A stretch of 64,000 nucleotides of DNA, from positions 186,001-250,000 of the forward strand of contig NC_088803.1 in NCBI RefSeq assembly GCF_011386835.1. Reading direction: 5' to 3'. The notes under the pieces were generated by a model, which worked only from the letters and a program-made list of their open reading frames with translations, ran no database searches and had not been told where the DNA came from. Positions within the stretch are counted from its first letter, which is position 1. Each line of letters begins with the position of its first letter. This document shows, piece after piece, positions 1 through 31,134 of this stretch. Position numbers and translations under genes: made by a program. The stretch comes from Chrysemys picta bellii (Eukaryota).

Positions 1-10
1 GACCGTCACA
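1..10. mobile_element. Terminus of an LTR element interrupting the CR1 ORF1 (rest lies outside the window)
   Basis: The window opens with GACCGTCACA, the ...GTCACA terminus seen on other LTRs here. The CR1 ORF1 reading frame stops abruptly at this junction. Confidence 0.4.
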
Positions 11-940
11 CCACCATAGAGGTCCTGGATTTCAGTCTCTTCCCTAGCAGCCTAAATTTGGCCTCCAGGACGTCTCTCCTACCCTTCCCTATGTCATTGG
101 TACCTACATGTACCACGACCACCGGCTCCTCCCCAGCACTACACATAAGTCTGTCTAGATGCCTCGAGAGATCCGCAACCTTCGCACCAGGCAGGCAAGT
201 CACCATGCGGTTCTCCCGGTCATCACAAACCCAGCTATCTACGTTTCTAATGATCGAATCTCCCAATACTAATACCTGCCTTTTCCTAGCAACTGGAGTT
301 CCCTCCCCCGGAGAGGTAACCTCAGTGCGAGAGGCAACCCCAGCACCGTCTGGAAGGAGGGTCCCAACTATGGGAAGGTTTCCCTCTGCTCCCGTTGACT
401 GCTCTGCTTCCCTGGGCCTTTCATCCTCCTCAACAGCGTAGGGGCTGTCTGACCGGAGGTGGGACAATTCTACAGTGTCCCGGAAAGCCTCATCAACATA
501 CCTCTCTGCCTCCCTTAGCTCCTCCAGTTCCGCCACCCTGGCCTCCAAAGCCCGTACGCAGTCTCTGAGGGCCAGGAGCTCCTTGCACCGAATGCACACA
601 TACGCCACCCACCCATGGGGCAGGTAATCATACATGCTGCACTCAGTGCAATAAACTGGATAGCCCCCACTCTGCAGCTGGGCTTCTGCCTGCATTGTCT
701 CCAACAGCTGCCTAGGTTACTGAATGGGTTTTGTTTAAATCAAGAAGTTTTGAATGTAGTTTAGTTTACAGGTTTTAAAGAACAGCAAGTGAACCTCGCC
801 CCCTTCCCACCCCCATTCCAAACTCCCTTGCGAAACTCCCTGTTAGCAGCTCCCTGGTCGCTTGCTCACTGTTTTATAAAGCCCTGGCCTTCTTGATAGC
901 CCCGCCCCCTGACTAAGGCTCAGATATGAATGAACCACAT
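11..940 (-). mobile_element. CR1 LINE 5' part with ORF1 (Cys-rich zinc finger, coiled coil, SGNH/GDSL esterase domain), truncated
   Basis: The ORF starting at 704 has CTECSMY...CIRCKEL, a heptad region LEARVAELEEL, and esterase blocks LVLGDSIIR, CLPGAKV and VHVGTNDIG typical of CR1 ORF1p. The 5' boundary is approximate. Confidence 0.85.
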
Positions 941-1313
941 AAAATGCCCACATGAGGGCAGCATGCCCTAAGCGTTGAGCAGGGGTTGCTGTGCTTCTGG
1001 GCAAGACTGCAGTGGCTTTCAGCTCACGGTCAGTGGGAATTGTTTGTAGTAGAATCATTCCAGTGATGACTCAGGTCTATACAGAGCATCTGTAGCATTG
1101 GGGAACATGCCCTGGAGTCTGACTCCTCTGTTTATTTCTACAGCATGTGTAAGGGCAACCCCCCTCCCGCCAAGACTGTCCCATAATTGGGACCAGATCG
1201 CCACTGGTGCAAATCATGACTCCAATTTACACCAGTTGAGGAGTGCTTTGTTTCTCTCACGCTCCATCCATCCAGTGACATACACATCATCTGTCTATCT
1301 ATCCATCCTCATA

Positions 1314-1315
<2 letters not shown>

Positions 1316-1349
<34 letters not shown>
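1316..1349. repeat. (CT)n microsatellite
   Basis: Directly visible dinucleotide run. Confidence 0.95.
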
Positions 1350-1350
<1 letters not shown>

Positions 1351-1409
1351 GCTAGCTAGCTACGATCCATGGGTCTGACACACGCCTGTTGCAACATGTG
1401 ATGTACCTC

Positions 1410-1925
1410 ATCCAGTGCACTAAATGCCCCAGTAACAAGTACGTGGCTCAAACCAGATGCTCACTACGCTCTCACAGCCCCTCACATGGAACAAAAGATA
1501 AAAACACCCTGCCTGCCCTGGGCAGACGCTTGTAACGAAGTGATCACTCCATATCTGACCTCTCGGGGCTCGTCCGCGAAGGAACCTGCACAGCACCTGC
1601 AAAAGACAAGCTAGAGAGCTTAAATTCATGACTTTGTTACACACCAATAATCATGGTCTTAATAAAGGCACCATCTTTATGGCTTGTTACACCAATCTGA
1701 ACCCCACTAACCCCTCTTTTTCGTCCTATGACTGCAAGGGTGTTAACAGGCTACTTCACCTCGCATGGGCTCAGAATATGTTAATTACTGGGGCTAAACC
1801 ATCTGTTCTACCTTCTGTTTCGCTGTGAGATGCTGACCAGAAGACGAGCTCTGTGTAGTGCGAAAGCTTTTCTCTGGCACCAAGAGGAGCTGGTCCAATC
1901 AAAGTTATTACCTTACTCACCTTCT
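1410..1925 (+). mobile_element. Penelope-like element 3' fragment (decayed GIY-YIG end plus terminal repeat)
   Basis: The C-terminal motif NNHGLNKGTIFMACY resembles the Penelope ORF end (HGLNRDTGFMAYY type). It is followed by a GAGCTCTGTGTAG..CGAAAGCTT...GGTCCAAT terminal-repeat-type sequence. Confidence 0.7.
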
Positions 1926-2227
1926 CTCTCTCTCCCAATGCACAACCCTCAGCCTCCCCATCCATTCTCACACACAGCCATCTATCCAGCTCTCACTCAT
2001 CCTTGCTGACCCATTCAGCCCATGGTCTTCGTGCTGTGGTCAGTTTGAGTCTGGTGCTGGCTGCAGGGATACCCAGTTAGTCTCCAGAAGAGAGGCCATG
2101 ACAGGGGATTGGATGAACAGGGCCTTCTACCTCTGGTTTCTTTGCTCTGATGGCTGAGTCACTTCCTGACTTGCTGCTCTTTCAGCTTTTCTGTGTCTCC
2201 TCCATACAGCAAGGGAGAGATTTCAGC

Positions 2228-2560
2228 ATGCACGTCAGGTGTCTCCTCCTCGCTGCTGCTCTAAGCGGCTTTTGGGGTAAGCATGGACTTGGCCTCCAAC
2301 TTATTTGCCCCTCTCCTAAGAAGTTCCTCCCGGGTCTTCCCAGGTCTCTGCAGGGAACGGAACGTGCTGACTGAAAGCGCTGGGGGCTGGTTTTAATGCT
2401 GGGGAAATGCAGATTGGTGGGGCTCTCTCTTTGGTTTGTTTTTGGCCATTCCTTCACAGGTCCCGGAACCTTTGCAGAGGAGAACTGAAGATCAAGCCAG
2501 AAAAGATCTCTCTATCCCCAGTCTGCTGCTGGCTGATCAGCCATTAGCTTTTAGCAGCCA
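2228..2560 (+). pseudogene. TCR V leader exon plus heavily decayed V relic
   Basis: Leader exon 2228-2276 encodes MHVRCLLLAAALSGFW-G with a phase-1 GTAAG donor at 2277. An acceptor (ccttcacag) ends at 2459 and gives GPGTFAEEN*. A downstream frame has an FR3-like LSIPSLLLAD. There is no Cys23, Trp41 or clear RSS. TGAGTCA and CTTCCT motifs lie about 70 bp upstream. Confidence 0.5.
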
Positions 2561-2726
2561 GTGGAGCGTAGGACTTCCAAAGCTGCTAAAGGGAGTGGAA
2601 TGGCCAGTTCGTGGGACCTGGCGGGGTCAGGCTCCTGCCCAGCTTAATGCAGTGCTGGGTTTTGGGGAGCCCTGCAGGGATTGCCTGCACCAGTGCAGCT
2701 GATCCTGCCATTCTTCTGCCTTCCAG

Positions 2727-3036
2727 CTCAGGCCCTCAGGGCCTGCGGAGGTGACGCTGACAGAGAGGCAGAGCATGACCCTGAGCTGTAACTTCTCCAG
2801 TGGCCGCTCCCAGCTGGATGTGTTCTGGTACCGGCAGCGCCAGGAGCAGCCACCCCAGCTTATCATGCGTGTCAACAGCTACGGGCAGGAGTTGTCCTAG
2901 AGTGGGCACTTCTGGGCAGCGTTGCGTCCGCAGAACAACATGGCTCCCCTCAGCATCCTGGGGGCAGCCCTGCAGGACAGGGCGGGTTACTCCTGCGCCC
3001 TGGGCTGGCAGCTCAGCATTCCTGCTCACAAAAGCC
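2727..3036 (+). pseudogene. TCR alpha/delta V pseudogene
   Basis: Reads ...EVTLTERQSMTLSCNFSSGRSQLDVFWYRQRQEQPPQLIMRVNSYGQELS*SGHFWAALRPQNNMAPLSILGAALQDRAGYSCALG. Cys, WYRQ and YxC are present, but there is an in-frame TAG at 2898-2900. The acceptor is out of phase. A nonamer-like ACAAAAGCC sits at 3028-3036 with no valid heptamer. Confidence 0.85.
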
Positions 3037-3364
3037 TGCCAGCCTCCTCGTCCCGTGTTGGGCTTGGGGCTCAGCTGAACACAGCACAGCTCTCTCTGAG
3101 GGCACAGGGAGCCCAGCCTCCTGATCTCCCCGAGATGACCAAGGTGTAGCCATGGACCAGGTGTGATTCACCCCCATGTGCAAGACAGACGACAGCTCCC
3201 TCCCTCTAGCCAGGCTTCCCTCTGGACTTTCCTGTCTGTGAGAGTGGTGCCGCTCTGCACAGTCTCTGACTCTCACCAGATACTCGCTGTCCATTCCGCC
3301 TGGGGCTTTACACAGTCTCTCTGTGGCTGTCTGTGTGAGACCCCCAATGGTTGTTTTGTTCCAG

Positions 3365-3653
3365 GTGTGATGGCCCAGACCACTGTGCACCAGCTGGAGG
3401 GGCCGGTCACTGCCAAGGAAGGGGATGCCTTCCAGATCAATTGCACATACCAAACTGCCAACTTCTACGGCTTGGCCTGGTACCAGCAGTGGGAGGGAAA
3501 AGCCCCAGGCCTGGTCTCATACCAGGTAGCAGCTGGTCAGGAGGAGTATGGGCGATTCACTGCTTTCCTCAGCACCGCTGGGAAATACAGCCTCCTTCAC
3601 CTCAAGGAGACCTGGGTCTCAGACGCTGCCTCCTACCTGTGTGCTGTGAGAGA
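3365..3653 (+). CDS. TRAV1: TRAV1-like T-cell receptor alpha V exon (open frame; leader not located nearby)
   Basis: Acceptor ttgttccag ends at 3364 (phase 1). The exon encodes (G)VMAQTTVHQLEGPVTAKEGDAFQINCTYQTANFYGLAWYQQWEGKAPGLVSYQVAAGQEEYGRFTAFLSTAGKYSLLHLKETWVSDAASYLCAVRD. Hand alignment to human TRAV1-2 as recalled gives 49/81 identities with no gaps from TAxEG to CAVR. Confidence 0.85.
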
Positions 3654-3692
3654 CACACTGACTCCAGGGGCTTCCTGAGCTGTGCAGTATCT
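3654..3692 (+). promoter_or_regulatory. V recombination signal sequence (23-bp spacer), weak nonamer
   Basis: Heptamer CACACTG at 3654-3660, 23-bp spacer, nonamer GCAGTATCT at 3684-3692. Confidence 0.7.
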
Positions 3693-4329
3693 GGAGCAGG
3701 TGTGTGTATGGTGGGGGAATGGGCTCCTCAGATCTCCCCTACTGCCGAGAGCAGTTATCTCATGCTGCTGGGAACAGTGCAGAGGTTACTGGATTCAGGC
3801 CCCTCCTCCGCCATAGACTTCCCGGGTGATCTTGGGCCAGCACTTGGCCTCAGTTCCCATCTCTCCAAAGGGGAAAACAGCCCTGCCCTTCCTCCCGGGG
3901 GGAGAGAGGGCTGGAAGGATCAATATGTGAAAGATTGGGCAGTGCTTTGAGATCGCCCAAAGCGCTATATGCGAGAGAGACGGTGGTGTTATTAATGACT
4001 ACTTGCAAAGGAATAGAAGGGCTGCCACTCCCAGCAATCATCTCGCTCAGTCTCATGCCTATGACAGCGGCTGGCACCAGCTGCTTCCGAGGAAGGTGTA
4101 AGATCCTGTGAATTTCCCCCTGTGAATGTTTCCTCCTGACCTCTAGTAGTCAGAGAGGGGCTCAAGCCCTGGAGCATGAGGTTGAATGTCCCTACCAATG
4201 TTTTCTGTCACAATTAAAACTCTGGCTATTCCAGTGAGAGCCTTACAGAGCTCAGTGTGTTTGGCGTATTGGAAAGGAGACTGAGAGGACCCTTCATCAC
4301 ATTGTAGAAGTATTTTCATGGGAAGCAAA

Positions 4330-4640
4330 CATCGGCTGCTAATGGGCCATTCAAGCTAGTGGAGAAAGTCAGAACAAGAACCATGGGCTGGAAGTTGAAG
4401 TACACAAGAATTAAGCACAGATTTCTAACACAAGGGCAATTAACCATAGGAATAAACTTTCAAGGGGAGGGGTGAATTCTCCAGCTCTTGAGGCCTTCCG
4501 ATCAAGGCCAGATGCCTTTGAACATTCTTGTTCTCCTTCCTGGAAGATACTTTAATCCAGCACCATTTATTGGGCTCAGGGCAAGTGGATGAAATTCTCT
4601 GGCGTGTGTCAGACAGCAGGTCAAACTAGCGCGAATGGTC
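4330..4640 (+). mobile_element. CR1 3'-end fragment (old)
   Basis: Decayed AGAACAAGAA...TGGAAGTTG...TTTCTAAC...GGTGAATTCTCC tract resembling the 3' ends of the better-preserved CR1 copies in this window. Boundaries are approximate. Confidence 0.55.
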
Positions 4641-5050
4641 CCTCCTGGCTTTCAGACCCCTGGGAGTTGGAAGTGTTAACACCAGGACTGGAGGTACCCC
4701 TGGGGATCTGAAGTGTGGTCCCCAGAAGTCGTCCAGCTGTGACTCACCCACCACCGAATACTCTCCCTTCTCCATCCAGAGACTGGGATCCTCCAAACAG
4801 CCTAAGGGAATTGGGAGCTGGGTGCCTGAAGCTTTTGCAAACCTGAGCCACAAACACCTCCTATGGTAACTCCCTGGTACACGTTTGACCAGTGTGCAAT
4901 GTTCAGACAGGCTGCTGGGGGGCACTAAAGGCAGGTTTCAAACCAGCCCTTCTATGCGTTTTGTAGGAGAAGGGAGAGAGTCCTGGCTGTTCAGAGCTGA
5001 AAACCTGCTGAGAGCAGAGAGCTGGGGGCTTTCTCTGTCTCTTCAATGCA

Positions 5051-6459
5051 ATGATCTCCTTGGATGGTGTCCTGGTTTTCTCCCTCTGCATCTCAGGTGG
5101 GTTTGTGGGGAAATTGCTGCCAATCATTCCTGTTAGGTGAGCTGCTCATGGTCGATACGTAGCTATGGAGGGTGAAGAGTTGTGAAAGCAGATGGCAGTT
5201 CTTTAATTTCAAATGGGATCTAGCAACTGAGATGAAGCTAGCTAGACAAATTCAAGCTGGATATAAAGGGCCAATTTAGAACAGGGAGGGTGATTCGCTA
5301 TTGGAACAACTTTTCTTGGGGACTTGCTGGTGTCTCCATCGCTTGGGCTCTTTCTAAAAGCTCAGCTGTAGCTCACTCTCTGTGCAGAAATCCCAGGAGA
5401 AAGGCTCTGGCCTGGGTTATACAGGGGATCGCCATGTTCCTAGTGATCCTTTGTGGCCTTTACATCTCTGAATTGTCAAACCAGGGGCCAAAATGTCGTT
5501 TGTTTTCCTAGAAATCTGTTTAAAAAGCAAAGAAAGATTCAATTAGAAATGTTTATATAGTAAAACAGCAAGCAACCACCTGCCAAAAACCAACCCCCAA
5601 ACCCCAGCCAAACAACCCCCCGCCCCCCAACAAACCCAAACTAATCAACCAACAAAATGCCTGGAAAAAATGAAAAGTGAAAAATTTTCAGTTTGTGCTT
5701 TTTTGGCAGAAACCCCCCCAATGGGGCAGTGTGACTGTGGGGAGAGCGCCGGAGTGTAGGACCCAGTCTGCCCGCTGGGTGAGCTTTGGCAAGGCCTCTC
5801 TGGGCCTCATTTCCCCACCTGTAAAATGACCTTCTTTGTCAAGCTTTTTGAGATTGATGCATGAAAAACACTGTGTTAGAGCCAGGGGTTGTTAGAGGGA
5901 CAGGGGAAGTCTCTTATTCTGTCAAAAAGCCACTTTCTGTAGGAAAAAAAGTTTCAAGAGACTTTTTTCGAGCTGCCAGATGTGAAACAGGTGCTTCAGC
6001 AGCAGTGTGACTGGGAGATTTCGGCCTGCCAGGGAGAGGGGAATTTGGGGGGCAGGAGGGGAAGGCTACTGGAAGTGGGATAGGGATGTGCTCTCAGGGC
6101 CAACAGCTCTGTACCACCCTTCTCTCTTTTGCAGCCCCACTGGCCAGAGCCCAGCAAGGGGGTAAGGATACGGTGACCCAGCCTCCTGCCACGCTGATGT
6201 CGTCTGAAGGGGAGAATGTCACCTTACCTTGCAGCTTCACGTCCATCTCCTCCACCCCCACTGTCGCTTGGTACCGGCAGCGCCTGTTGCATTCCCTGGA
6301 GTATTTGATTCGTGGAGACTCCCTGGGATTTACCGACAGGGCGAATGAGGAGGAGACGCGCCTGCATCTCTGGGTGCATAAGCAGCAAGGAGCAGCTCCT
6401 CTGAATATCTCTGCAGCCCGGGTCTCAGACTCCGCTCTGTTCTTCTGTGTGCTGAGTCC
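5051..6459 (+). CDS. TCR alpha/delta V gene, apparently functional (leader exon 5051-5096, V exon 6135-6459)
   Basis: Leader MISLDGVLVFSLCIS-G with GTGGGT donor at 5097; acceptor ctctcttttgcag ends at 6134 (phase 1). The V reads APLARAQQGGKDTVTQPPATLMSSEGENVTLPCSFTSISSTPTVAWYRQRLLHSLEYLIRGDSLGFTDRANEEETRLHLWVHKQQGAAPLNISAARVSDSALFFCVLS with Cys23, Trp41 and Cys104 intact. The leader-to-V pairing is inferred. Confidence 0.8.
5150..5475 (+). mobile_element. CR1 3'-end fragment inside the V leader intron
   Basis: GAAGCTAGCTAGACAAATTCAAGCTGGA...GGTGATTCGCTATTGGAACAAC tract, homologous to the CR1 end at about 16.1-16.4 kb. Confidence 0.55.
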
Positions 6460-6498
6460 CACAGCCCTGCAGCCCTGGCCTTTCCCTGTGCGAGAACC
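6460..6498 (+). promoter_or_regulatory. V RSS (23-bp spacer)
   Basis: CACAGCC at 6460-6466, 23 bp, GCGAGAACC at 6490-6498. Confidence 0.8.
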
Positions 6499-7975
6499 TC
6501 CGAGTCCAGCCCCAGTCCAGTCCCAGCCTCAGCCCCCTCCTCTGTGCATGATCCTCCCAACTCCCCCCCCCCACCCCACCCGCCCCATCCTGTCCCAGGG
6601 TGAGAACCTCCCAGCCCCAGTCCAGCCCAGCCTCAGCCCCCTCCTCTGTGCATGATCCCCCCAACTCCCCCCCCACCCCGCCCGCCCCATCCTGTCCCAG
6701 GGTGAGAACCTCCCAGCCCCAGTCCAGTCCCAGCCTCAGCCCCCTCCTCTGTGCATGATCCTCCCAACTCCCCCCCCATCCCCATCCCCATCCTGTCCCA
6801 GGGTGAGAACCTCCCAGCCCAGCCCCCTCAGCCCCCTCCTCCGTGCATGATCCTCCCAACTCCCCCCCATCCCCATCCCCATCCTGTCCCAGGGTGAGAA
6901 CCTCCCAGCCCCAGTCCAGCCCCAGCCTCAGCCCCCTCCTCCGTGCATGATCCTCCCAACTCCCCCCCCACCCCGCCCGCCCAGCCCCATCCTGTCCCAG
7001 GGTGAGAACCTCCCAGCCCCAGTCCAGCCCCAGCCCCATTCGCCTCAGCCCCCTCCTCCGTGCATGATCCTCCCAACTCCCCCCCGTGCCCCATCCTGTC
7101 CCAGGGCGAGAACCTCCCAGCCCCCTCAACCCCCTCCTCTGTGCCTGATCCTCCCAACTCCCCCCCGCCCGCCCCAGCCCCATCCTGTCCCAGGGCGAGA
7201 ACCTCCCAGCCCAGCCCCTCAGCCCCCTCCTCCGTGCATGATCCTCCCAACTCCCACCCGCCTGCCCCAGCCCCATCCTGTCCCAGGGCGAGAACCTCCC
7301 AGCCCCAGTCCAGCCCCAGCCCCATTCGCCTCAGCCCCCTCCTCCGTGCATGATCCTCCCAACTCCCCCCGTGCCCCATCCTGTCCCAGGGCGAGAACCT
7401 CCCAGCCCCCTCAACCCCCTCCTCTGTGCCTGATCCTCCCAACTCCCCCCGCCCGCCCCAGCCCCATCCTGTCCCAGGGCGAGAACCTCCCAGCCCAGCC
7501 CCCTCAGCCCCTCCTCCGTGCATGATCCTCCCAACTCCCACCCGCCTGCCCCAGCCCCATCCTGTCCCAGGGCGAGAACCTCCCAGCCCCAGTCCAGCCC
7601 CAGCCCCATTCGCCTCAGCCCCCTCCTCCGTGCATGATCCTCCCAACTCCCCCCGTGCCCCATCCTGTACCAGGGCGAGAACCTCCCAGCCCAGCCCCCT
7701 CAACCCCCTCCTCTGTGCATGATCCTCCAACTCCCCCCCATCCCCATCCCCATCCTGTCCCAGGGCGAGAACCTCCCAGCCCAGCCCCCTCAGCCCCCTC
7801 CTCCGTGCATGATCCTCCCAACTCCCCCCCCGCCCGCCCCAGCCCATCCTGTCCCAGGGCGAGAACCTCCCAGCCCCAGTCCAGCCCCAGCCCCAGCCCC
7901 TCAGCCCCCTCCTCCGTGCATGATCCTCCCAACTCCCCCCCCATCCTGTCCCAGGGCGAGGACCTCCCAATCCCA
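6490..7975. repeat. C-rich minisatellite, about 16 units of about 90-110 bp, with a partial 3-unit higher-order period of about 285 bp
   Basis: Recurrent unit (G/T)GAGAACCTCCCAGCCCC...CCTCCGTGCATGATCCTCCCAACTCCCCC...CCATCCTGTCCCAGGG. The variant CCCATTCGCCTCAGCC recurs near 7035, 7321 and 7606. Confidence 0.95.
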
Positions 7976-8512
7976 ACCCCCCACTCCCCTGCAGCCACTG
8001 CTGCCTGAGGCAAGGATCTCCCAGCCACAACCCACTCCCCTTGTAGAAGAACCTCCCAGCCCAGCCCCTGGCCCCTGTCCGCAGCCCTGCAAGCTCAGGG
8101 GTGGAATCATGGCTGTGTGACGGGACAGGACAGTCTCAGAATTGAGCACTGGGGGGTGACGTTCGCACCTGAGCACCAGGCCCCAGCCGAAGGACTAGCC
8201 CCACTGAGGGCCTAAGCACACGGAGGCCCTGGGAATGCAGCTAGCGAGATAGAAGAGAGAAGTTTTACAATTGCTGTATCTTTAACTGTGCATCGCTCTT
8301 GCTACCTCAGAGGAGATCAAAGGGGGCTGCTGTGCTGTCTTGCGACCAGCTCAGAAGGGAAGAGACTGGTGGGTGGAGGGAGGGACGGGCTAGGTGCTCT
8401 GAAGCAGTTTGCTCTGTGCAGAAGGGGTGTTTGCGGTTGCAGAGGCAGCTGGGTGGCAGGCGTTAGTCACGGCTAGAAAGCACAAAACGCGGCCAGTGCT
8501 CTGAGCATTGCC

Positions 8513-9190
8513 ATGAAGGAATTACTGCCTGTGCTGTCCCTACTTGGTGGGTAAGAGTCTCCTTCTCTTGTCTTCATCCAGCCTCTGGCTAGGTGTGAAA
8601 AATTGGGAGGGGGTGGGGGGTAACAGGCGCCTATATAAGAAAAAGCCCCTAATATCGGGACTGTCCCTATAAAATTGGGACATCTGGTCACCCTCCCCCC
8701 GGCAGGGTCCGTCGATTTATCCGCTCTCTCTCCAGCACGGCACTGTTGAGCACCTTTCGTATGGGTTAGAGCCGCTCATTCTGTGGGGTCAGCGTCTCTG
8801 CACCCAGGTTTTCTCTAGCCCTAGACAATTTGTGCATCACTGCCCAGGCGGCTGAGAGTCCGTCCCTCTCTCACTCCCTGCCTCTCTTCCCGCAGTGGCT
8901 CCGAAATGGGCCCTGGCCCAGGTTTTCCAGCCCCCTCGGCTCACGGATGTGGAAGGAGAAAGGATCTTGATCCCATGCAGCCAAAATGCCACCTCCCATG
9001 ACATGATGTCTTGGTACAAACAGCCCCAGCAGGGCCGGGGGGCGCCGAGCTTTCTAGGGACTGGGCATGACGGCTCCTCCACCGCTGGAGAATTCACCAT
9101 GGCTGTGCACAAGGCCTCCCGCTCCACCAAACTCACCCGAGATGGAGCCAGCCTGAGCGACGCCGGCATCTACTACTGCGCAGTGAGAGA
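8513..9190 (+). CDS. TRAV gene, TRAV2/4/26-like, apparently functional (leader 8513-8546, V exon 8896-9190)
   Basis: Leader MKELLPVLSLL-G with GTGGGT donor at 8547; acceptor cttcccgcag ends at 8895. The V reads VAPKWALAQVFQPPRLTDVEGERILIPCSQNATSHDMMSWYKQPQQGRGAPSFLGTGHDGSSTAGEFTMAVHKASRSTKLTRDGASLSDAGIYYCAVRD. Confidence 0.85.
8590..8694. mobile_element. Partial hAT-type MITE in the V intron
   Basis: Ends in GGGACATCTGGTCACCCT, the same terminal inverted repeat (TIR) as the complete copy at 61520-61639. The left TIR is lost. Confidence 0.7.
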
Positions 9191-9229
9191 CACAGCGAGG
9201 GGAATCCAGGTGCCAGCTGCACAGAAACC
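9191..9229 (+). promoter_or_regulatory. V RSS (23-bp spacer), near consensus
   Basis: CACAGCG at 9191-9197, 23 bp, ACAGAAACC at 9221-9229. Confidence 0.9.
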
Positions 9230-9784
9230 TGCAGCCTGGCTTCCTGCTGGGCCCTCCTGAGCCAGCCCAGCATTGGGTGCCCCTCGCTTCAAGCTGATGT
9301 GCCTCTTCTGTTCAAAAAACTTTTTTCAAAGTGCCCTAGAATCCGCATGCAGCATCAGATCTGCTGGAAAACTGCTAGGATAGATGGGAGGTAAATATAC
9401 AGCGTGTGCGGGAAAGATGGGATCATTTGGACCAGAGGTTCCTGAGATATGACCTGGTCTTAAAATTCTCACTTTTATTTGCACAGAACTAGGGGATAAA
9501 CAACAGGCCAGGAAATTCAAAGGGACTTGAGTGTCTAATTCCCTTCGCCACTCCAAGCCTGTGTGATCGGATCTCTCCTGTTCTCGGCTAGTGCAGACTG
9601 GTGCCAAAAACCAGGTCCAAAACCCAGTGATCTACAGCCAGACAGACTCTCTCAGCGGCGCAGGGCAGGGTCGGTTCTGCAAGCACCTGCTCTGAAGTGC
9701 ACCCACAGACTCAGCTCCCAGGAGGGCTGACTGGATCCTCTGCCTTCCTGCCACTTTACTGTGTGGTTTTAGTTCTTCTCCTGG

Positions 9785-10035
9785 GGAAGGGAGTGGGGTG
9801 TAGTGGTTAAAGTTGTAGGGCTGCGAGCCAGGATTCCTGGGTTCTGGGAGGGGAGTGGGGGCTAATTGGTTAGCATAGGGGTGTGGGTGGGTTTGAGAAC
9901 CAGGACTCCTGGGTTCTATTCCCAGCTCTGCAATGTGACCTGAGCCATGTCGCTCTCTGCCTCAGTTTCCCCCACTGTAAAATGGGGATGATAACCTTTT
10001 CTTACCTCCTGGGGCTATTGTGAGGACAAATCCAT
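9785..10035 (+). mobile_element. tRNA-derived / MIR-like SINE
   Basis: GTGTAGTGGTTA...CCAGGACTCCTGGGTTCTATTCCCAGCTCTG...CTCTGCCTCAGTTTCCCC..CTGTAAAATGGGGATGATAA, a CORE-SINE-like pattern. Confidence 0.6.
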
Positions 10036-10214
10036 CAGTGTGCCTGAGCTGACAGGGGCCATGTAAACAGAGACAGAACTGGCAAAAGGTGGCAGAAAAT
10101 GTCATCTTTTGGTAGGAAGCTAAAATAATGAAAGAATAAAGGACTTGGCACAATACTTTGGTCCTTGCCTGGTATAAATTAAGTAGGTTCCATTGCAGTC
10201 AATGGGATCTGGTC

Positions 10215-11014
10215 TGTCACAGGTCAGGGCAACCGCACCTGTATTCCCCACTCCGTGGTCCAGCCAGGGCACTCATTCTCAGGCTGCCTGCTCCCCAGCC
10301 ATCACCTCTCTTGGGAAATGCACATCTCTCTCTCGCTCGACCGCTCAGTTCCCTGTCGACACGGTGAATTCCCCAGCAAGTCACACTGCCTCAGCAGGGC
10401 TGCTTTCCCTGATCCTCAGCGGCTATAAACAGTGCAATTTCCCACAGTGAAGTCACCACACTGCCCTGTATAAGCAAGCACATTTATTCTTAAAGTAAAA
10501 GCATTCCAGAGAACACAGATTAGAAACACAAAGAGAACCTACCTGCGTGGAGAGAAGCTTGATAGAGAAGGGCTCTGGCAGGTGACCAATTCTCCAGACC
10601 TCACCAAGGATTTTTTATGGGGTCACAAGTTCATCACAGTCACTAGCTCAGAACAAGCACAGACAAGTTTAGTCCCTCCTTTATCCAGCCTGGGTCTTTG
10701 GGAATAGGTGATTTGTAGCCAGTGCGGCCCTCCACAGGGTGTCGCTTCAAGAGGCTGGGTTTTTGCTTAACTGGGGGAGTTACAAACCCCCACCTAGCAA
10801 TCCCCTGGGACACCCACTTAGCTTTAAAAGTTCCCATCGTTTGAAACAGTCCTTTGATGTGCATAGCACTTTCCAGGGTTTACATTAGCCAGGTCTCCCC
10901 ACCACCCACAGTAAGACATGAATGTTTGCATGTCTTAAAATGAACTCCTAAAATAATTGAACTTAATTCAGTGAGGTTTGCCCAGGACATTGCAGGAAAT
11001 TGCCGCATCTGTCA
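10215..11014. mobile_element. Solo LTR (800 bp)
   Basis: TG...CA termini flanked on both sides by an exact 5-bp target-site duplication (TSD), TGGTC at 10210-10214 and 11015-11019. Confidence 0.7.
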
Positions 11015-11170
11015 TGGTCTATAGCTGTTCCCCCCCTAAATAAACTAGTGATAGAGTTATATTCCCCGTCAGATGTCAGCAGGTTTCTAGCAGTGCTCGG
11101 CTACTATTATTATATTAGCATAATTTGATAGTGCCTGAGGCCAGCCAGGCACAGCATGCTGGGTGCTGTA

Positions 11171-12235
11171 CAGAATCCTAGAATCATAGAATATCAGGGT
11201 TGGAAGGGACCTCAGGAGGCATCTAGTGCAACCCCCTGCTCATGGCAGGACCAATCCCCAACTAAATCATCCCTGCCAGGGCTTTGTCAGGCCGGGTCTT
11301 AAAAACCTCTAAAGAAGGAGATTCCACCACCTCCCTAGGTAACCCATTCCAGTGCTTCACCACCCTCCTAGTGACATAGTGTTTCCTAATATCCAACCTA
11401 GACCTCCCCTACTGCAACTTGAGACCATTGCTCCTTGTTCTGTCATCTGATACCACTGAGAACAGTCTAGATCCATCCTCTTTGGAACCCCCTTTCAGGT
11501 AGTTGAAAGCAACTATCAAATCCCCCCTCATTCTTCTCTTCTGCAGACTAAACAATCCCAGTTCCCTCAGCCTCTCCTCATAAGTCATGTGCTTCAGCCC
11601 CCTAATCATTTTTGTTGCCCTCTGCTGGAATCTTTCCAATTTGTCCACATCCTTCTTGTAGTGTGGGGCCCAAAACTGGGCACAGTACTCCGGAAGAGGT
11701 CTCACCAATGTCGAATAGAGGGGAATGATCATGTCCCTCGATCTGCTGGCAATGCCCCTACTTATACAGCCCAAAATGCCGTTAGCCTTCTTGGCAACAA
11801 GGACACACTGTTGACCATATCCAGCTTCTCGTCCACTGTAACCCCTAGGTCCTTTTCTGCAGAACTGGCAGCCATTCGGTCCATAGTCTGTAGTGGTGCA
11901 TGGGATTCTTCCGTCCTAAGTGCAGGACTCTGCACTTGTCCTTGTTAAACCTCATCAGGTTTCTTTTGGCCCAATCCTCTAATTTGTCTAGGTTCCTCTG
12001 TATCCTATCCCTACCTTCCAGCGTATCTACCACGCCTCCCAGTTTAGTGTCACCTGCAAACTTGCTGAGAGTGCAGTCCATGCCATCCTCCAGATCATTA
12101 ATGAAGCTATTGAACAAAACCGGCCCCAGGACCAACCCTTGGGACACTCCGCTTGATACCGGCTGCCAACTAGACATGGAGCCATTGATTACTACCCATT
12201 GAGCCCGATGATCTAGCCAGCTTTATATCTACTTT
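11171..12235 (-). mobile_element. CR1 LINE 3' fragment (RT C-terminus)
   Basis: ORFs 11845-12177 and 11409-11774 carry [30 protein letters not shown] and [26 protein letters not shown] terminal repeats mark the left end. Confidence 0.9.
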
Positions 12236-12612
12236 ATAGATGGGTCCTGTCCCGAAAAGCTGCCATTTAAATAAAGCAGAGAGCCAGCGGGGGAGTGAAG
12301 GGATGGAACACCCCAGCAGAGCGAACAATGGGATAGCTGCGAATGTCATTGAGTGCCAGGAGTTTTTGGGGGTGAGTTATCTAGACAGGCTCAGCGAAAT
12401 GGAAAGGAAAGGCAAGGGAAGGGTGGGGAGGGGACAAGGCAGGGAGAAGCAGATGAGAGGGGCCAGTGGGCAGTGAAGTTGGGGAGGGGGAAAGTTGGAG
12501 CAAACAGCAGCGGGCTGAGGAAGTCCAGTGAAATCTTGGGAAGTTCTCCGAATGCCCAGAGCTCCCTGCTTTGGCTGCTTCTGGAGTTCACTATGGCTTG
12601 CGGAAAACTCTG

Positions 12613-12856
12613 CGCCTGGGGAAAACATTTCATATTTTTTTAAAAAGTCACATCCCTGGTGATTTAATTAGGGGAAGGTGCACAGGTCTCCCAATAGCTC
12701 ACTCTTTAACCAGCCTCCTTCCTGGTGGCTGAGCGAAGCAGACGGTCCTATATCTGACAGCAGCAGCATTGCAGGAGGCTGGGAGCTGCCAAGCCAGGAT
12801 GCAGAGATGAGAGGAAATCCTGGAGCTGCTGGGCCCAGCTAGCTCAGCGGGTAAGT
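12613..12856 (+). promoter_or_regulatory. Candidate OR promoter (O/E plus homeodomain sites) and first non-coding exon of the OR4E2-like gene
   Basis: TCCCTGGTGA at 12653-12662 (one mismatch to TCCCNNGGGA) abuts TTTAATTAG at 12663-12671. A consensus donor G|GTAAGT follows at 12851. Assignment to the OR is inferred. Confidence 0.4.
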
Positions 12857-13247
12857 ACGCTGCCTTCAGAAGGCAAAGAGCAGGGGATTTTAACCAGCCC
12901 CGGGGTTTTGGATTTATTATGAATGGGTCGGATGCCCAGCTGGCATAACTTGGCCACCGCTCCATTGAAGCGAACACGCTCTGCTGATTTGCACAGCCGG
13001 GGAGCTGGCTTTATCATTTCTTTGTACCACGGCAGTGCCTAGAAGCGTCCGCTGATATCAGAACTCGTTACGCCAGGTGCTGCCCAGCCATACAAGGAAG
13101 GAGGCCGTGTCCTGAACTGCTGCGATTGTCAAAGACCTGTCACCCCACACTCGAACCGTAACCTTCATCCTCACGCTAACCCTGTATGCTCCTTTAGCCC
13201 CCGCACGAAAGGCTGGCTCATTCCCCTTCCATGCTGGAGGAAGTCTC

Positions 13248-13565
13248 ATGTGGCTGGGGACGCTCTCCGTATGGAGGACCGGCTTGCTAGCTGGTTTCCG
13301 TAAGCGGATTTCAGTGGGCGCTGCACTGACTCAGAGCAGCTGAGGCTCTAGTCTAGTGTGGGAGGGAACAGGGTCTCTGGTGTCTACCCTGGCCTCTATC
13401 AGGAACGCCGGGCACATCACTGAGGCAGACGTCTTCACCCCATGTAAGCCATGAGCAGCCTGACAGTCAGAGGCTCCACGCTGCTCCCCAGCTCGAGAGC
13501 GTGCAGCTGAGCATCCTCTTCTACCTCACAAGGAGGGTTTAGGCTGGGATTTCCCAGCAAACCTG
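13248..13565 (+). pseudogene. Possible internally deleted V relic with leader and RSS-like sequence
   Basis: Leader-like exon 13248-13299 (MWLGTLSVWRTGLLAGF, GTAAGC donor), acceptor ending at 13402, in-frame TPGTSLRQTSSPHVSHEQPDSQRLHAAPQLESVQLSILFYL, then CACAAGG-23 bp-GCAAACCTG at 13527-13565. Confidence 0.4.
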
Positions 13566-17813: not shown

Positions 17814-18749
17814 ATGGAGGGGGAGAATGGCACCATGGTGACGCACTTTGTATTGCTCGGCCTCACCGAGACCCGGGAGCTGCAGCTGGTCCTCTTCGCC
17901 CTCTTCTCCATCATTTACCTGCTGATCCTGGCGGGGAACGTCCTCATCATGGTGACGGTGGTCAACGACCGGCGCCTCCACACCCCCATGTACTTTTTCC
18001 TGGGGAACCTCTCCTTTATCGACATCTGCCACGCTTCGGTCACGGCCCCCAAGATGCTGGCTGATCTCCTCTCTGTGGAGAAGACCATCTCCTTCGGGGG
18101 CTGCATGGCCCAACTTTTCTTCCTCCACCTCTGCGCCTGTGCCGAGATCTTCCTCCTGACCGCCATGGCCTACGACCGCTACGTGGCCATCTGTCACCCA
18201 CTGCAGTACCCCTCGCTCATGAGTCTGCGAGCCTGCACCTGGCTGGTGGGGGCCCTGTGGTCTGGAGCCACCGTCCACTCCCTGGTGCAGACCGTGCTCG
18301 CCGTCCGGCTGCCCTACTGTGGCCCCAATGTCATCGATAGCTTCTTCTGCGACGTGCCGCCTGTCATCAAGCTGGCCTGCACCGACACCTACCTGACAGG
18401 GGTGCTGATCGTCTCTAACAGTGGCATGATCTCTCTCACCTGCTTCCTGGCCCTGCTAGGCTCCTACCTGGTGATCCTGGTCTCTCTGCAGAGCCGGAGC
18501 ATTGAAGGGCAGCGCAAAGCGCTCTCCACCTGTGGTTCCCACTTGGCGGTGGTGGCGTTGTTCTTTGGGCCGTGCATATTCATCTACACCCGCCCTACCA
18601 CCAGCTTCTCGCTGGACAAGGTTGTGTCGGTTTTCTACACGGTGGTGACCCCGGTGCTCAACCCGGTGATCTACACCCTAAGGAACCAGGAGGTGAAGGG
18701 GGCCATGAGGAAACTGAGGGAGAGACAGATTTTCTCCAGGGGGAAATAG
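17814..18749 (+). CDS. OR4E2: Olfactory receptor, class II, OR4E2-like (311 aa, intact)
   Basis: Carries GN, LHTPMYFFLGNLS, MAYDRYVAICHPL, KALSTCGSH and PVLNPVIYTLRN. The segments KLACTDTYLTG.LIV.NSG and VVALFFGPCIFIYTRP.TSFS.DKVVSVFYTVVTP match human OR4E2 as recalled. An acceptor (ctcccccgcag) ends at 17803. Confidence 0.9.
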   Translation: MEGENGTMVTHFVLLGLTETRELQLVLFALFSIIYLLILAGNVLIMVTVVNDRRLHTPMYFFLGNLSFIDICHASVTAPKMLADLLSVEKTISFGGCMAQLFFLHLCACAEIFLLTAMAYDRYVAICHPLQYPSLMSLRACTWLVGALWSGATVHSLVQTVLAVRLPYCGPNVIDSFFCDVPPVIKLACTDTYLTGVLIVSNSGMISLTCFLALLGSYLVILVSLQSRSIEGQRKALSTCGSHLAVVALFFGPCIFIYTRPTTSFSLDKVVSVFYTVVTPVLNPVIYTLRNQEVKGAMRKLRERQIFSRGK

Positions 18750-22718: not shown

Positions 22719-23654
22719 TCATTTGTTTCTGGAATTGACCTGCCTCGCCTGCAGTTTGTGCAGTGCCTGCAGCATGTCCTCGTTCCTCAGGGTGTAGATG
22801 ATGGGGTTAAGCAGTGGAGTGACAGCCGTGAAGAACACTGACACCACCTTGTCTGCGGCCAGGCTCTTAGCTGGCCTGAGGTAGATGAAGATACAGTGGC
22901 CCAGGAAGAGCGTCACCACCGTCAGGTGGGCGGCGCAGGTGGAGAGCGCCTTGCGCCGCCCCTCGGAGAAGTGGTTTCTCAGGGAGACGAGGATAACCGC
23001 GTAGGAGACCACCAGCACCACGAAGCAGACCACGGAGATGAGACCTGAGTTGGAGACGATGAGCACCTCAAAGACATAGGTGTCAGCGCAGGCCAGCTTG
23101 AGGACCAACGGGACGTCGCAGAAGAAGTTGTCAATGGCATTGGGGCCACAGTATGGGAGGTTTAGGGTCAGCGCAGTCAGGGCCACGGAGTGGACCAGCC
23201 CACCCAGCCACATGGCTGCGGCCAGCTTCAGGCAGAACCCGCGGCTCATGATGGTGCCATAGCGCATGGGGTTACAGATGGCTGCGTAGCGGTCGTAGGC
23301 CATGATGGTGAGGAGGAAGATCTCGGTGCAGGCGAAGAGGTGGAGGAAGAACATCTGGGCGATGCATTCGCCAAAGGAGATGGTCTTCCTCTCCACTAGG
23401 AAGTCAGCCAGCATCTTGGGCATCACCACGGAGGAGTGGCAGACGTCAATGAAAGAGAGGTTGCTGAGGAAAAAGTACATGGGGGTGTGCAGGCCTTGGT
23501 CATAGACGATGGTGAAGACAATGAGCGTGTTCCCCAGCAGGATCAACATGTAGATGACTGTGAAGAAGGCGAACAGGACCAGCTCCAGGGCGTGATTGGT
23601 GCTCAGGCCAGAAAGGATGAACTCATTCACCCTGCTCTCATTCCACACCACCAT
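22719..23654 (-). CDS. Olfactory receptor, OR4E1-like paralog (311 aa, intact)
   Basis: MVVWNESRVNEF..., LHTPMYFFLSNLS, MAYDRYAAICNP, NSGLISVVCFVVLVVSYAVILVSL, KALSTCAAHLTVVTLFLGHCIFIY, PLLNPIIYTLRN. An in-frame upstream ATG at 23693 may be intronic. Confidence 0.9.
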   Translation of the reverse strand: MVVWNESRVNEFILSGLSTNHALELVLFAFFTVIYMLILLGNTLIVFTIVYDQGLHTPMYFFLSNLSFIDVCHSSVVMPKMLADFLVERKTISFGECIAQMFFLHLFACTEIFLLTIMAYDRYAAICNPMRYGTIMSRGFCLKLAAAMWLGGLVHSVALTALTLNLPYCGPNAIDNFFCDVPLVLKLACADTYVFEVLIVSNSGLISVVCFVVLVVSYAVILVSLRNHFSEGRRKALSTCAAHLTVVTLFLGHCIFIYLRPAKSLAADKVVSVFFTAVTPLLNPIIYTLRNEDMLQALHKLQARQVNSRNK

Positions 23655-29800: not shown

Positions 29801-31134
29801 AGGGCCATTTTTATGTTAATCCCCATTTTTTGAGGTTTTTTTTTTTTTTTTTTTAAGAATACGTTGGACAAACACCTGGCAGGGTTGGTTTTGCTTGGTC
29901 CTGTCTCAGTGTGGGGGGAAATGGACTAGATCATTTCTCACGGTCCCTTCCAGCCCCAAATTGGTACATTTAATAAGATCATAGCAATCTTCTTTGTATA
30001 AGTCTCTAATAAAGGTGAAACAAGCAGTCAAAAAATATGAAATCCCAAAGTAGCCAAGGTTTTCTGAAGTTATAACAGAAATAGTAAAGCAACAAAAACC
30101 AAACAAAACTACCTTCTCCAACCAATCAAACCTAAATAGAAGCAGAAATATTTTTATAAAAATCCAAATTGAATAGAAAAAAAACACTTACTCTTGTTGT
30201 AGTTCCCAATGCTTAGGGCTCTCTGGACAATCATTGCATCTGGGCTAACTCCTAATACTTCACTTCTATGAACTAAGAAGTAAAAATTGGGACTTCTCTG
30301 TCTAAAGCAGAAGCAGCAGAATTGCCCTTTGTGCCTGTCTCGGATTATTTTAATTTATCAGAGAAATCAATTATAGTTTGTATTTAACAGGCAGTTTCTG
30401 TTTTGCTGCCAATAATATCAAAATCATTGGTGAGTAGGTTAACAATTTTGTTCCTGCTTTTAGGGTTCTGTAATAGACAGCTGGTGATTTACCAGTGGAA
30501 GCTTTTTAAAAAACAAGGTTTTTTGACTAATTTTCCAACAATCGTTGTTGTGCAAATAGGAACCTAATGGTACAATTTCTTGGTCTACTTCCTCAGAATG
30601 CAGTGACTCCTGTGCTAATTCTGTGTTGCTCTTCCTAGTCATTAATGCTCAATCTTCTTATAACAAAGAAGGATTTCTAGGTGAATTCTACCTGCAGGGG
30701 ATCCCCATAACTTCTAGCCCCAGAGATCCATAGCTGCTGCAGGGCAGTGTTCTCAACCCCAACTATATAACCTTTTGCACTGCTGTAAATTCATTGCAAT
30801 GTGACATCAATTTGTGCTGGTACCTAAGAAAAGTTTTGTACTCCAGGGACTTGATGTTGTCTGACTTGTGGCTGAGTTGCAAGGGGAGTTGTTAAGATGT
30901 CCAAAGTTTTTGAAGGTACAAACTTTGTGAGAGTTTAACAGCTGCCACTGGGATTGGAGTCCTAACGTTAGATCCACAGCTGGTGTTAATCAGAAGAACT
31001 CCATTGGAGTCAATGAGCCAGATCCCCAGCTGGTGTAAATTGGCCATTGCACCAATGGGGTCAATACAGCAGCATTGATTTACTGGAGAAGCTGAGGATC
31101 TGGACACTGGACATGTGTTTGTGAAATGGCCTTT

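What the first reader, a model, noticed from the sequence alone, without database searches (positions are those of the whole stretch)
3365..3692. A TRAV1 (MAIT-cell V-alpha) look-alike in a non-mammalian, probably turtle, genome
Seen: an open V exon with acceptor, Cys23/Trp41/Cys104 and a 23-RSS, reading QINCTYQTANFYGLAWYQQ..G.AP..VSYQVAAGQEEYGRF..FLS....YS.L.LKE....DAASYLCAVRD. Established: TRAV1 (human TRAV1-2) supplies the invariant alpha chain of MR1-restricted MAIT cells, is unusually conserved, and is described as co-occurring with MR1 in marsupials and eutherians. By hand against the recalled human sequence, 49 of 81 positions are identical with no gaps, and CDR1 and CDR2 have the same lengths. 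The positions equivalent to F29, Y48, V50 and E55, which I recall as MR1 contacts, are retained. Inference: TRAV1 may predate mammals, and reptiles may use a TRAV1-based semi-invariant T cell with an MR1-related class I molecule. Alternatively, MR1 later co-opted an ancient V.
Basis: partly seen in the sequence, partly recalled or inferred. Interest (0 to 1): 0.9.

Follow-up and report, generated by a model that had tools for sequence, protein, structure and literature searches.

The report
Turtle counterpart of the MAIT-cell V gene
The painted turtle has an intact, transcribed T-cell receptor alpha V gene of the same ancient lineage and the same olfactory-receptor neighbourhood as mammalian TRAV1, but it lacks the loop motifs mammals use to dock on MR1, so MR1 most likely recruited a V gene that already existed.

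Summary
Window 3365-3692 (+) holds an open V exon with Cys/Trp/Cys and a heptamer-23-nonamer signal. The window is Chrysemys picta bellii, CM062330.1 186001-250000.

What the tools add:
- **Similarity.** The 26 best PDB matches are human TRAV1-2 chains (about 89-95 bits, 50/84 identical, no gaps). The mouse MAIT TRAV1 chain follows at 82 bits and the next family at 72. Two neighbouring turtle V genes reach only 46-48 bits.
- **Tree.** In an ML tree of 160 V domains it groups with mammalian TRAV1 (99/88), and both group with the avian family called chicken TRAV2 (95/91). The grouping survives removal of CDR1 and CDR2.
- **Reverse search.** It is the best non-mammalian hit of human TRAV1-2 in my set.
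- **Synteny.** It lies 14 kb upstream of an OR4E2/Olfr1509-like gene, the neighbourhood of TRAV1 in human and mouse.
- **Leader.** The true leader exon is at 2228-2276. One contig joins 2276 to 3365, and a dead V remnant sits inside that 1088-nt intron.

Against a MAIT-like role:
- The TRAV1-exclusive MR1-docking motifs are broken: CDR1 G-F-N is N-F-Y and CDR2 V-L is V-A.
- The avian relatives are a multigene family that dominates the chicken spleen repertoire.
- The nonamer is weak (4/9).

Verdict: an ancient TRAV1 lineage is supported; a reptilian MAIT-like system is not. Rearrangement was not shown.

The parts
2228..2276 (+). L-PART1, the leader exon: ATG plus 16 codons plus 1 nt, with donor G|gtaagc. 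Joined to L-PART2 it encodes MHVRCLLLAAALSGFWG-VMA, a hydrophobic signal peptide.
   Evidence: The contig of run X1 carries 69 nt that do not lie on 2700-3950 and then 3364-3553. Its last 30 loose letters match window 2246-2275 exactly and nowhere else. The sequence was read. It has the same 17-residue length and MH start as the avian leaders MHLGNLVLTVFLGQLLG.
2277..3364 (+). Leader intron, 1088 nt, GT...AG. This is unusually long for a V gene.
   Evidence: The joint 2276|3365 is inferred from the X1 contig. The donor and acceptor were read.
2727..3005 (+). V pseudogene remnant nested in the leader intron. It has an in-frame stop at 2898-2900, is out of phase with the leader, and has no recognisable RSS.
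   Evidence: hmmsearch with the V profile gives 50.8 bits at 2742-3002. tblastn also finds it. No CAC heptamer was found at its end.
3365..3653 (+). V-EXON: L-PART2 at 3365-3375, then the V region with Cys23, Trp41 and Cys104, ending ...YLCAVRD.
   Evidence: Translation; Pfam V-set; PDB phmmer; contigs of four runs lie on it.
3654..3692 (+). 23-RSS: heptamer CACACTG (6/7), 23-nt spacer, nonamer GCAGTATCT (4/9 to ACAAAAACC).
   Evidence: The neighbouring V genes at 9191 and 56886 carry CACAGCG-23-ACAGAAACC (nonamer 8/9), so this signal is the weaker one.
17814..18749 (+). Olfactory receptor gene that marks the conserved neighbourhood. Its orthologues at 90% identity or more are named OR4E2-like or Olfr1509-like.
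   Evidence: Human OR4E2 lies between TRAV1-2 and TRAV2, and mouse Olfr1509 lies between TRAV1 and TRAV2 (PMC4574546).

Best explanation
This is a complete germline TCR alpha variable gene of the painted turtle. Its parts are L-PART1 at 2228-2276, a 1088-nt intron, the V-EXON at 3365-3653 and a 23-RSS at 3654-3692. It descends from the same ancestral amniote V gene as mammalian TRAV1 and the avian family called TRAV2 in chicken, and it has kept its place next to OR4E-type olfactory receptor genes. It is transcribed from its own promoter and its leader is spliced (shown). By inference it works like any TRAV: RAG joins it through the 23-RSS to a TRAJ, and the product pairs with a beta chain. The MR1-docking motifs of mammalian TRAV1 are absent and its avian relatives serve the bulk repertoire. 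Its most likely use is therefore in ordinary, diverse alpha-beta TCRs, perhaps at low frequency because the nonamer is poor. On this reading MR1 recognition is a later, mammalian specialisation of an old and slowly evolving V gene.
For: - Intact frame and V-set fold signature.
- Spliced leader-V contig with 0 mismatches.
- The 26 best PDB hits are human TRAV1-2 chains at about 89-95 bits; the mouse MAIT TRAV1 chain follows at 82 bits and the next family at 72. Neighbouring turtle V genes reach only 46-48 bits with no family preference.
- Identity ranking: avian family 46-65%, mammalian TRAV1 48-60%, everything else 40% or less.
- Careful IQ-TREE of 160 V domains: {turtle + 8 mammalian TRAV1} 99/88 and {+ 6 avian V} 95/91. 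Both clades are recovered without the CDR1 and CDR2 columns (SH-aLRT 82 and 89).
- The best non-mammalian hit of human TRAV1-2 in the set is this V at 96.7 bits; birds score 58-87 and other families 71 or less.
- OR4E2-like and OR4E1-like genes lie 14-43 kb downstream on the same strand cluster, matching human and mouse TRAV1 (PMC4574546; PMC2275272).
- The G-F-N and V-L motifs are replaced by N-F-Y and V-A.
- Chicken TRAV2 has 23 genes and supplies over 90% of the spleen repertoire (PMC10972964).
Against: - V-J rearrangement was not shown. Only one low-depth spliced contig (depth 2.1) in one run supports transcription, and germline (sterile) V transcripts are also spliced.
- The nonamer is degenerate, and the heptamer has C at position 5.
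- The tree set was built from hits to this V. It may therefore under-sample mammalian TRAV families, and most rows carry no taxon label.
- Copy number of this family in the turtle genome is unknown.
- The AU test cannot tell whether the turtle V sits with mammals or with birds inside the clade (p-AU 0.275).
- All three differences seen in related turtles change the amino acid. That does not look like strong constraint, though the sample is tiny and the contigs are shallow.
Confidence: 0.7

Rival explanations
1. One reading: the V supplies the alpha chain of a semi-invariant, innate-like T-cell population in turtles, restricted by an MR1-related or other non-classical class I molecule.
For: - It is far better conserved against mammals than its neighbours (94 bits against 46-48).
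- F29, Y48, V50 and E55 are retained.
- Its position beside OR4E genes is conserved.
- Only one copy lies in this window.
- An earlier scan note, untested here, reports a non-MHC class I-like gene 19 Mb away on the same chromosome.
Against: - The two motifs described as exclusive to TRAV1 and responsible for docking on MR1 Y152, N155, E160 and residue 151 are not conserved (N-F-Y and V-A). They are near-invariant in the 23 mammalian TRAV1 sequences listed: G-F-N in all but camel, V-L in all.
- The turtle CDR1 matches the avian type (TANFYGL, identical in the woodpecker protein P0001), and the avian family is multigenic and conventional.
- Other reviews state that MR1 is absent from reptiles and birds (PMC11514058, PMC10733631).
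- No J usage, CDR3 or class I data could be obtained here.
Confidence: 0.08
2. The segment is an 'ORF' in the IMGT sense: open and transcribed, but rarely or never rearranged because its recombination signal has decayed, so it drifts towards pseudogene status.
For: - The nonamer matches 4/9 and has lost the A-tract (T at positions 5 and 7), whereas the neighbours match 8/9.
- The leader intron is 1088 nt long with a dead V inside it.
- Only 4 of 24 listed runs, all guessed RNA, hold any of it, at low depth.
- All three differences seen in related turtles are non-synonymous.
- Many open V genes of the unrelated chicken TRAV1 family are classed ORF for low-scoring RSS, so the category is common among V genes.
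Against: - The frame, splice sites, signal peptide and all structural residues are intact, even though the turtle V is about 55-60% identical to human after some 300 My.
- The essential CAC of the heptamer is present.
- A contig of run X3 stops at 3652, one base before the coding end. That is what variable V-J junctions would produce in an assembly graph, but it is suggestive only.
Confidence: 0.2
3. The resemblance to TRAV1 is convergence or chance within a fast-evolving V family, not shared descent.
For: V genes turn over quickly, and the alignment has fewer than 100 columns, so deep nodes of the tree are poorly resolved.
Against: - The clades are starred (99/88 and 95/91) and persist when CDR1 and CDR2 are removed.
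- The alignment has no gaps.
- Best hits are reciprocal.
- Independent positional evidence comes from the OR4E genes.
Confidence: 0.03

Closest known systems
Mammalian TRAV1 (human TRAV1-1 and TRAV1-2, mouse Trav1 / V-alpha-19)
   Same: It sits in the same V lineage in a supported tree and is a reciprocal best hit. It is 59.5% identical to human TRAV1-2 without gaps, with equal CDR1 and CDR2 lengths. It shares FR motifs (QINCTYQT, WYQQ, SASYLCAVRD), ends CAVRDT in germline like many mammalian TRAV1, and lies among OR4E-type olfactory receptor genes.
   Different: It lacks the MR1-docking motifs: CDR1 is N-F-Y rather than G-F-N, and CDR2 is V-A rather than V-L. Its leader differs in length and sequence (17 residues starting MH, against MWGVFLLYVSMKMGG). 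Its leader intron is 1088 nt and holds a nested pseudo-V. Its nonamer is weak. It is not known to be single-copy or the 5'-most V, and MR1 is not known in reptiles.
Avian V-alpha family called TRAV2 (V-alpha-2) in chicken
   Same: It is 46-65% identical. CDR1 is of the same type (NFYG), the leader has the same length and MH start, and the L-PART2/FR1 start is the same (xMGQ or VMAQ followed by T.V.Q). It is sister to, or inclusive of, the turtle V within the 95/91 clade, and the AU test does not reject turtle plus birds.
   Different: In chicken it is a 23-gene family paired with chicken TRAV1 genes along the locus, and it supplies over 90% of splenic TCR-alpha (PMC10972964). Only one copy is seen in this turtle window. 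The turtle V is closer to human TRAV1-2 (55%) than any bird V in the set is (47% or less).
Xenopus invariant V-alpha-6 / XNC10 system
   Same: It is a non-mammalian precedent for a germline V dedicated to a non-classical class I molecule (PMC12562908).
   Different: No sequence relationship was tested. Nothing here shows invariant use or a restricting element in turtles.

Membership tests
TCR alpha variable gene segment (TRAV) | V-set Ig domain with Cys23, Trp41 and Cys104 in an open frame | tested here: met
   PF07686, E 3e-8; TCR alpha chains, E 1e-26.
TCR alpha variable gene segment (TRAV) | Split leader: L-PART1 with a phase-1 donor, spliced to L-PART2 plus V | tested here: met
   A contig joins 2276 to 3365 with GT-AG borders and encodes a hydrophobic signal peptide.
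TCR alpha variable gene segment (TRAV) | Heptamer, 23-nt spacer and nonamer directly after the coding end | tested here: inconclusive
   The heptamer matches 6/7 with CAC intact and the spacer is exactly 23 nt, but the nonamer matches only 4/9. Recombination competence was not measured.
TCR alpha variable gene segment (TRAV) | Found rearranged to TRAJ and spliced to TRAC in transcripts | tested here: inconclusive
   No V-J contig was seen. One contig ends at 3652, one base before the coding end, and another spans the RSS in germline form.
TRAV1 orthology group | Groups with mammalian TRAV1, apart from other TRAV, in a supported tree | tested here: met
   Support is 99/88 with 8 mammalian TRAV1 and 95/91 with the avian family added. 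Without the CDRs it is 82 and 89. Caveat: the set was built from hits to the query.
TRAV1 orthology group | Reciprocal best match between species | tested here: met
   Forward: TRAV1-2 94 bits against 72 for the next family. Reverse: the turtle V at 96.7 bits is the best non-mammalian hit of human TRAV1-2 among 275 V domains, 5 of them from this window. The whole turtle repertoire was not available.
TRAV1 orthology group | [quoted passage not shown] | tested here: met
   OR4E2-like lies at 17814-18749, and OR4E1-like at 22719-23693 and 45868-46812. Compare PMC4574546 and PMC2275272. No V lies in the 8.9 kb upstream. Whether it is the 5'-most V was not established.
TRAV1 orthology group | Single-member family | not testable with these tools
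   Only this window and 6.6 kb upstream of it could be read. There is one copy in 70.6 kb.
MAIT-type invariant alpha chain V (works like TRAV1 on MR1) | CDR1-alpha G-F-N motif contacting MR1 Y152, N155 and E160 | tested here: not met
   The turtle has N-F-Y; only F29 is kept. The motif is described in PMC11066510 and is present in 22 of the 23 mammalian TRAV1 listed.
MAIT-type invariant alpha chain V (works like TRAV1 on MR1) | CDR2-alpha V-L motif contacting MR1 residue 151 | tested here: not met
   The turtle has V-A (YQVAAG against YNVLDG).
MAIT-type invariant alpha chain V (works like TRAV1 on MR1) | Preferential joining to a TRAJ33-like J that provides Tyr95, with a fixed CDR3 length | not testable with these tools
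   The J region is outside the window, and no V-J reads were obtained.
MAIT-type invariant alpha chain V (works like TRAV1 on MR1) | An MR1 gene (Lys43 Schiff-base pocket) in the same genome | not testable with these tools
   The rest of the genome could not be searched. [quoted passage not shown]

The most novel reading that the evidence does not exclude
Turtles keep a single, slowly evolving TRAV1 orthologue because it serves a semi-invariant innate-like T-cell subset restricted by a non-classical class I molecule. That subset would be a pre-mammalian forerunner of the MAIT/MR1 system, using a different CDR1/CDR2 docking code.
Probability: 0.08. Interest if true: 0.9.

Novelty: new member of a known kind. 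Interest (0 to 1): 0.55.

Why it matters
Current reviews present the TRAV1/MR1 pair as an invention of therian mammals that co-evolved, and they date MAIT cells from the appearance of MR1. This finding points the other way for the V gene. A turtle gene is the phylogenetic and positional counterpart of TRAV1, and it has a large avian sister family that does ordinary repertoire work. So the V gene appears to have come first and the restriction second: an old V beside the OR4E genes was recruited, and its G-F-N and V-L motifs were then fixed in the mammalian stem. That gives a concrete starting point for asking which changes created MR1 docking, and a defined gene to follow in reptile repertoire studies. 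It does not show innate-like T cells in reptiles.

Tried and rejected
1. I looked for a leader between 3010 and 3364. The ATGs at 3135, 3153, 3177 and 3348 give no hydrophobic, phase-1 exon.
2. An apparent leader 'MAPLSILGAALQ' at 2940 turned out to be FR3 of the nested pseudo-V.
3. The NCBI model LOC101936070 (P0002, P0163) starts at ATG 3153 and reads through the intron. It is a chimera of several V exons, and the RNA contig does not support it.
4. Word-indexed protein searches with the V alone and with P0002 returned only 1 and 4 proteins. The HMMER scan of representatives supplied the data set instead.
5. I tried to fetch the orthologous V from other turtles by walking from their OR4E2-like genes (Mauremys mutica L002, Gopherus flavomarginatus L003). 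No V lies within 10 kb and no gene call allowed a further step, so no dN/dS across turtles was possible.
6. The AU test of turtle plus birds against the free tree was not decisive (p 0.275).
7. Boudinot et al. 2016 and Harly et al. 2022 are not held in the library. I could not check whether they discuss non-mammalian TRAV1 relatives, nor which group of Su et al. 1999 holds the chicken V-alpha-2.
8. A search for 'TRAV1-like' found no paper.
9. Runs X2 and X4 cover intron and intergenic DNA, so they say nothing about expression.

Full report
**What is there.** Window 3365-3692 on the + strand begins with a splice acceptor (ttccag|GT at 3364/3365). The frame from 3367 is open to 3657 and has the first Cys, the WYQQ tryptophan and the YLC cysteine of a V domain. 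Pfam calls it V-set. The coding end is followed by CACACTG (3654-3660), exactly 23 nt, and GCAGTATCT (3684-3692).

**Which genome.** A painted turtle protein model (XP_023968887, P0002/P0163) contains the identical V. The locus fetched for it, from Chrysemys picta bellii assembly GCA_011386835.2, chromosome record CM062330.1, matches window 1-23303 at 100%. The window is therefore 186001-250000 of that record. It contains no N.

**The whole gene.**
- No usable leader exon lies between the V exon and the preceding 360 nt.
- A profile search showed that 2742-3002 is itself a V remnant. It has an in-frame stop at 2898-2900 and is out of phase.
- Laying public contigs on 2700-3950 gave the answer. 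One 260-nt contig of run X1 (organism A, the species whose DNA runs hold all words of the exon) lies on 3364-3553 with no mismatch and is preceded by 69 letters from elsewhere.
- Its last 30 loose letters occur once in the window, at 2246-2275.
- Read in context, this is a canonical L-PART1. It starts with ATG at 2228, has 16 codons plus one base, and ends in the donor G|gtaagc at 2276/2277. With L-PART2 it encodes MHVRCLLLAAALSGFWG-VMA.
- The intron 2277-3364 is 1088 nt long and contains the dead V.
- The leader has the length and MH start of the avian relatives' leaders. It therefore looks native to this gene, and the remnant looks like a later passenger.
- Precise removal of a GT-AG intron shows that the contig derives from RNA. 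It shows transcription and splicing, not rearrangement.

**Similarity to TRAV1.**
- Against all PDB chains, the 26 best matches are human TRAV1-2 chains (MAIT, GEM and ELS4 TCRs and others) at about 89-95 bits. The mouse MAIT TRAV1 chain follows at 82 bits, and the next family (TRAV12-2) at 72.
- The alignment to 4pjc_E covers 84 residues without a gap; I count 50 identities.
- As a control, the two neighbouring turtle V genes (6155-6463 and 8904-9194) reach only 46-48 bits. Antibody and assorted TCR chains are mixed at the top of their lists. The conservation of this V is therefore exceptional within its own cluster.

**Relatives elsewhere.**
- A HMMER scan of 1.84 billion representatives gave 641 hits. 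Ranked by identity there is a clear step: a large avian family at 46-65%, mammalian TRAV1 at 48-60%, and everything else at 40% or less.
- Named avian members come from woodpecker, turkey, sandpiper, song sparrow and blue tit. Their VSQQ/VTQQ start identifies them as the family called TRAV2 in chicken, which has 23 genes and supplies over 90% of splenic TCR-alpha transcripts (PMC10972964).
- Labelled mammalian TRAV1 sequences (human, green monkey, capuchin, tree shrew, naked mole-rat, camel, desman, ruminants) came.

**Tree.**
- I extracted 252 full V domains, thinned them to 160 with labelled members retained, and added the five V domains of the window.
- IQ-TREE (LG+C20+F+G4 by PMSF) puts the turtle V with the eight mammalian TRAV1 at ultrafast bootstrap 99 and SH-aLRT 88. 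That group joins six avian V at 95/91.
- Deleting the CDR1 and CDR2 columns leaves both groups in place (SH-aLRT 82 and 89), so the signal is in the framework.
- An AU test does not reject turtle plus birds (p 0.275). The data thus fit one ancestral gene that follows the species tree, with the turtle copy evolving slowly.
- In the reverse direction, the best non-mammalian hit of human TRAV1-2 among all domains is the turtle V (96.7 bits). Birds score 58-87 and other families 71 or less.
- Squamate, another turtle's and a frog V lie just outside the clade with weak support. Platypus V genes with a similar CDR1 fall elsewhere.
- Caveats: the set was seeded by the query, most rows are unlabelled, and there are only 98 columns.

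**Synteny.**
- The window holds four intact olfactory receptor genes. Their close orthologues in other turtles are named as follows:

| Window position | Strand | Name of orthologues |
|---|---|---|
| 17814-18749 | + | OR4E2-like / Olfr1509-like |
| 22719-23693 | − | OR4E1-like |
| 45868-46812 | − | OR4E1-like |
| 59762-60679 | + | OR10D3-like / Olfr958-like |

- In human, OR10G2 lies between TRAV1-1 and TRAV1-2, and OR4E2 lies between TRAV1-2 and TRAV2. In mouse, Olfr1509, Olfr1508 and Olfr1507 lie between TRAV1 and TRAV2 (PMC4574546). Opossum TRAV1 is likewise interspersed with olfactory receptor genes (PMC2275272).
- The turtle V sits 14 kb upstream of the OR4E2-like gene, with two other V genes between them.
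- The 8.9 kb upstream of the gene (window 1-2227 plus L001 1-6631) holds only retroelement fragments. I could not see further.

**Would it work like the MAIT V?**
- PMC11066510 names the CDR1-alpha G-F-N and CDR2-alpha V-L motifs as exclusive to TRAV1/TRAV1-2, and as the germline contacts with MR1 Y152, N155, E160 and residue 151.
- Of the 23 mammalian TRAV1 sequences listed, all but camel keep G-F-N and all keep V-L.
- The turtle CDR1 is of the avian type (TANFYGL, identical in woodpecker).
- Two reviews say MR1 is absent from reptiles and birds. [quoted passage not shown] I could not search the genome.
- Nothing here supports an MR1-like partner. The avian evidence shows that this lineage can serve the conventional repertoire.

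**Is it functional?**
- For: open frame, correct splice sites, a good signal peptide and a spliced transcript.
- Doubtful: the nonamer matches 4/9 and has lost its A-tract, while the neighbours carry ACAGAAACC.
- A contig of run X3 (a related organism C) ends at 3652, one base before the coding end. This is where assembly graphs break when V-J junctions vary. A contig of X2 runs through the RSS in germline form. These hints do not settle the question.
- The three differences seen in relatives (3395 T>C, 3512 T>G, 3577 G>A) all change the amino acid (L to P, L to R, A to T). They come from shallow contigs.

**Verdict.** They are strengthened by a tree, by reciprocal searches and by unexpected positional evidence. 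The functional speculation is not supported.

**Novelty.** Shared reptile-mammal TRAV clans were reported in general terms (bioRxiv 10.1101/002618; and the statement citing Su et al. in PMC2275272). I found no paper in the held library that names a sauropsid counterpart of TRAV1. I rate it a new member of a known kind, of moderate interest to comparative immunologists.

Noticed in passing
window 2727-3005 (+): A decayed V exon (stop at 2898-2900, out of phase, no RSS) lies inside the 1088-nt leader intron of the functional-looking V. In the one RNA contig seen, the transcript splices over it.
   Followed up: partly
window 17814-18749 (+), 22719-23693 (-), 45868-46812 (-), 59762-60679 (+): Four intact olfactory receptor genes are interspersed with the V segments. 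They are one OR4E2/Olfr1509-like, two OR4E1-like and one OR10D3/Olfr958-like. This is the turtle counterpart of the OR cluster next to the mammalian TRA locus.
   Followed up: partly
window 8904-9194 and 56599-56889 (+): Two nearly identical V genes (one residue apart in FR3, the rest at the N-terminal end) each carry a strong 23-RSS (CACAGCG-23-ACAGAAACC). Window 11179-12239 also repeats at 31134-32197 at 92% identity. Together these suggest a recent segmental duplication across the OR genes. They have no clear mammalian family match in PDB (46 bits).
   Followed up: partly
window 6506-7969: A C-rich minisatellite (units of about 93 and 284 bp, 5-15 copies, 79-90% matches) starts just after the RSS of the V at 6161-6460. 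Its unit contains GCGAGAACC, the nonamer-like sequence of that RSS. The long minus-strand ORFs at 6425-8030 are artefacts of this repeat.
   Followed up: partly
window 3153-13300 and 56719-56880; proteins P0002, P0163: The NCBI models of LOC101936070 are chimeras. They start at a 3-codon exon (ATG 3153), read through intron sequence into the V exon, and continue into pieces of other V genes and intergenic DNA. They should not be used as protein sequences.
   Followed up: yes
window 2155-2168 (+): About 65 bp upstream of the leader ATG there is TGAGTCA (AP-1-like) overlapping CACTTCCTG, the reverse of an ETS core CAGGAAGTG. This is a plausible V promoter element, read by eye only.
   Followed up: no
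window 27345-28133 (-), 35559-41045 (+); L001 1-6631: Retroelement remains: reverse-transcriptase ORFs (Pfam RVT_1) at 27345-28133 and 38609-39910, a zinc-knuckle ORF at 35559-37529, and integrase/RT-like ORFs in the 6.6 kb upstream of the window.
   Followed up: partly
window 55291-55446 (+): A short V-like fragment (FR2-CDR2 region only, 14.8 bits) lies 1.2 kb upstream of the V at 56629-56889.
   Followed up: no
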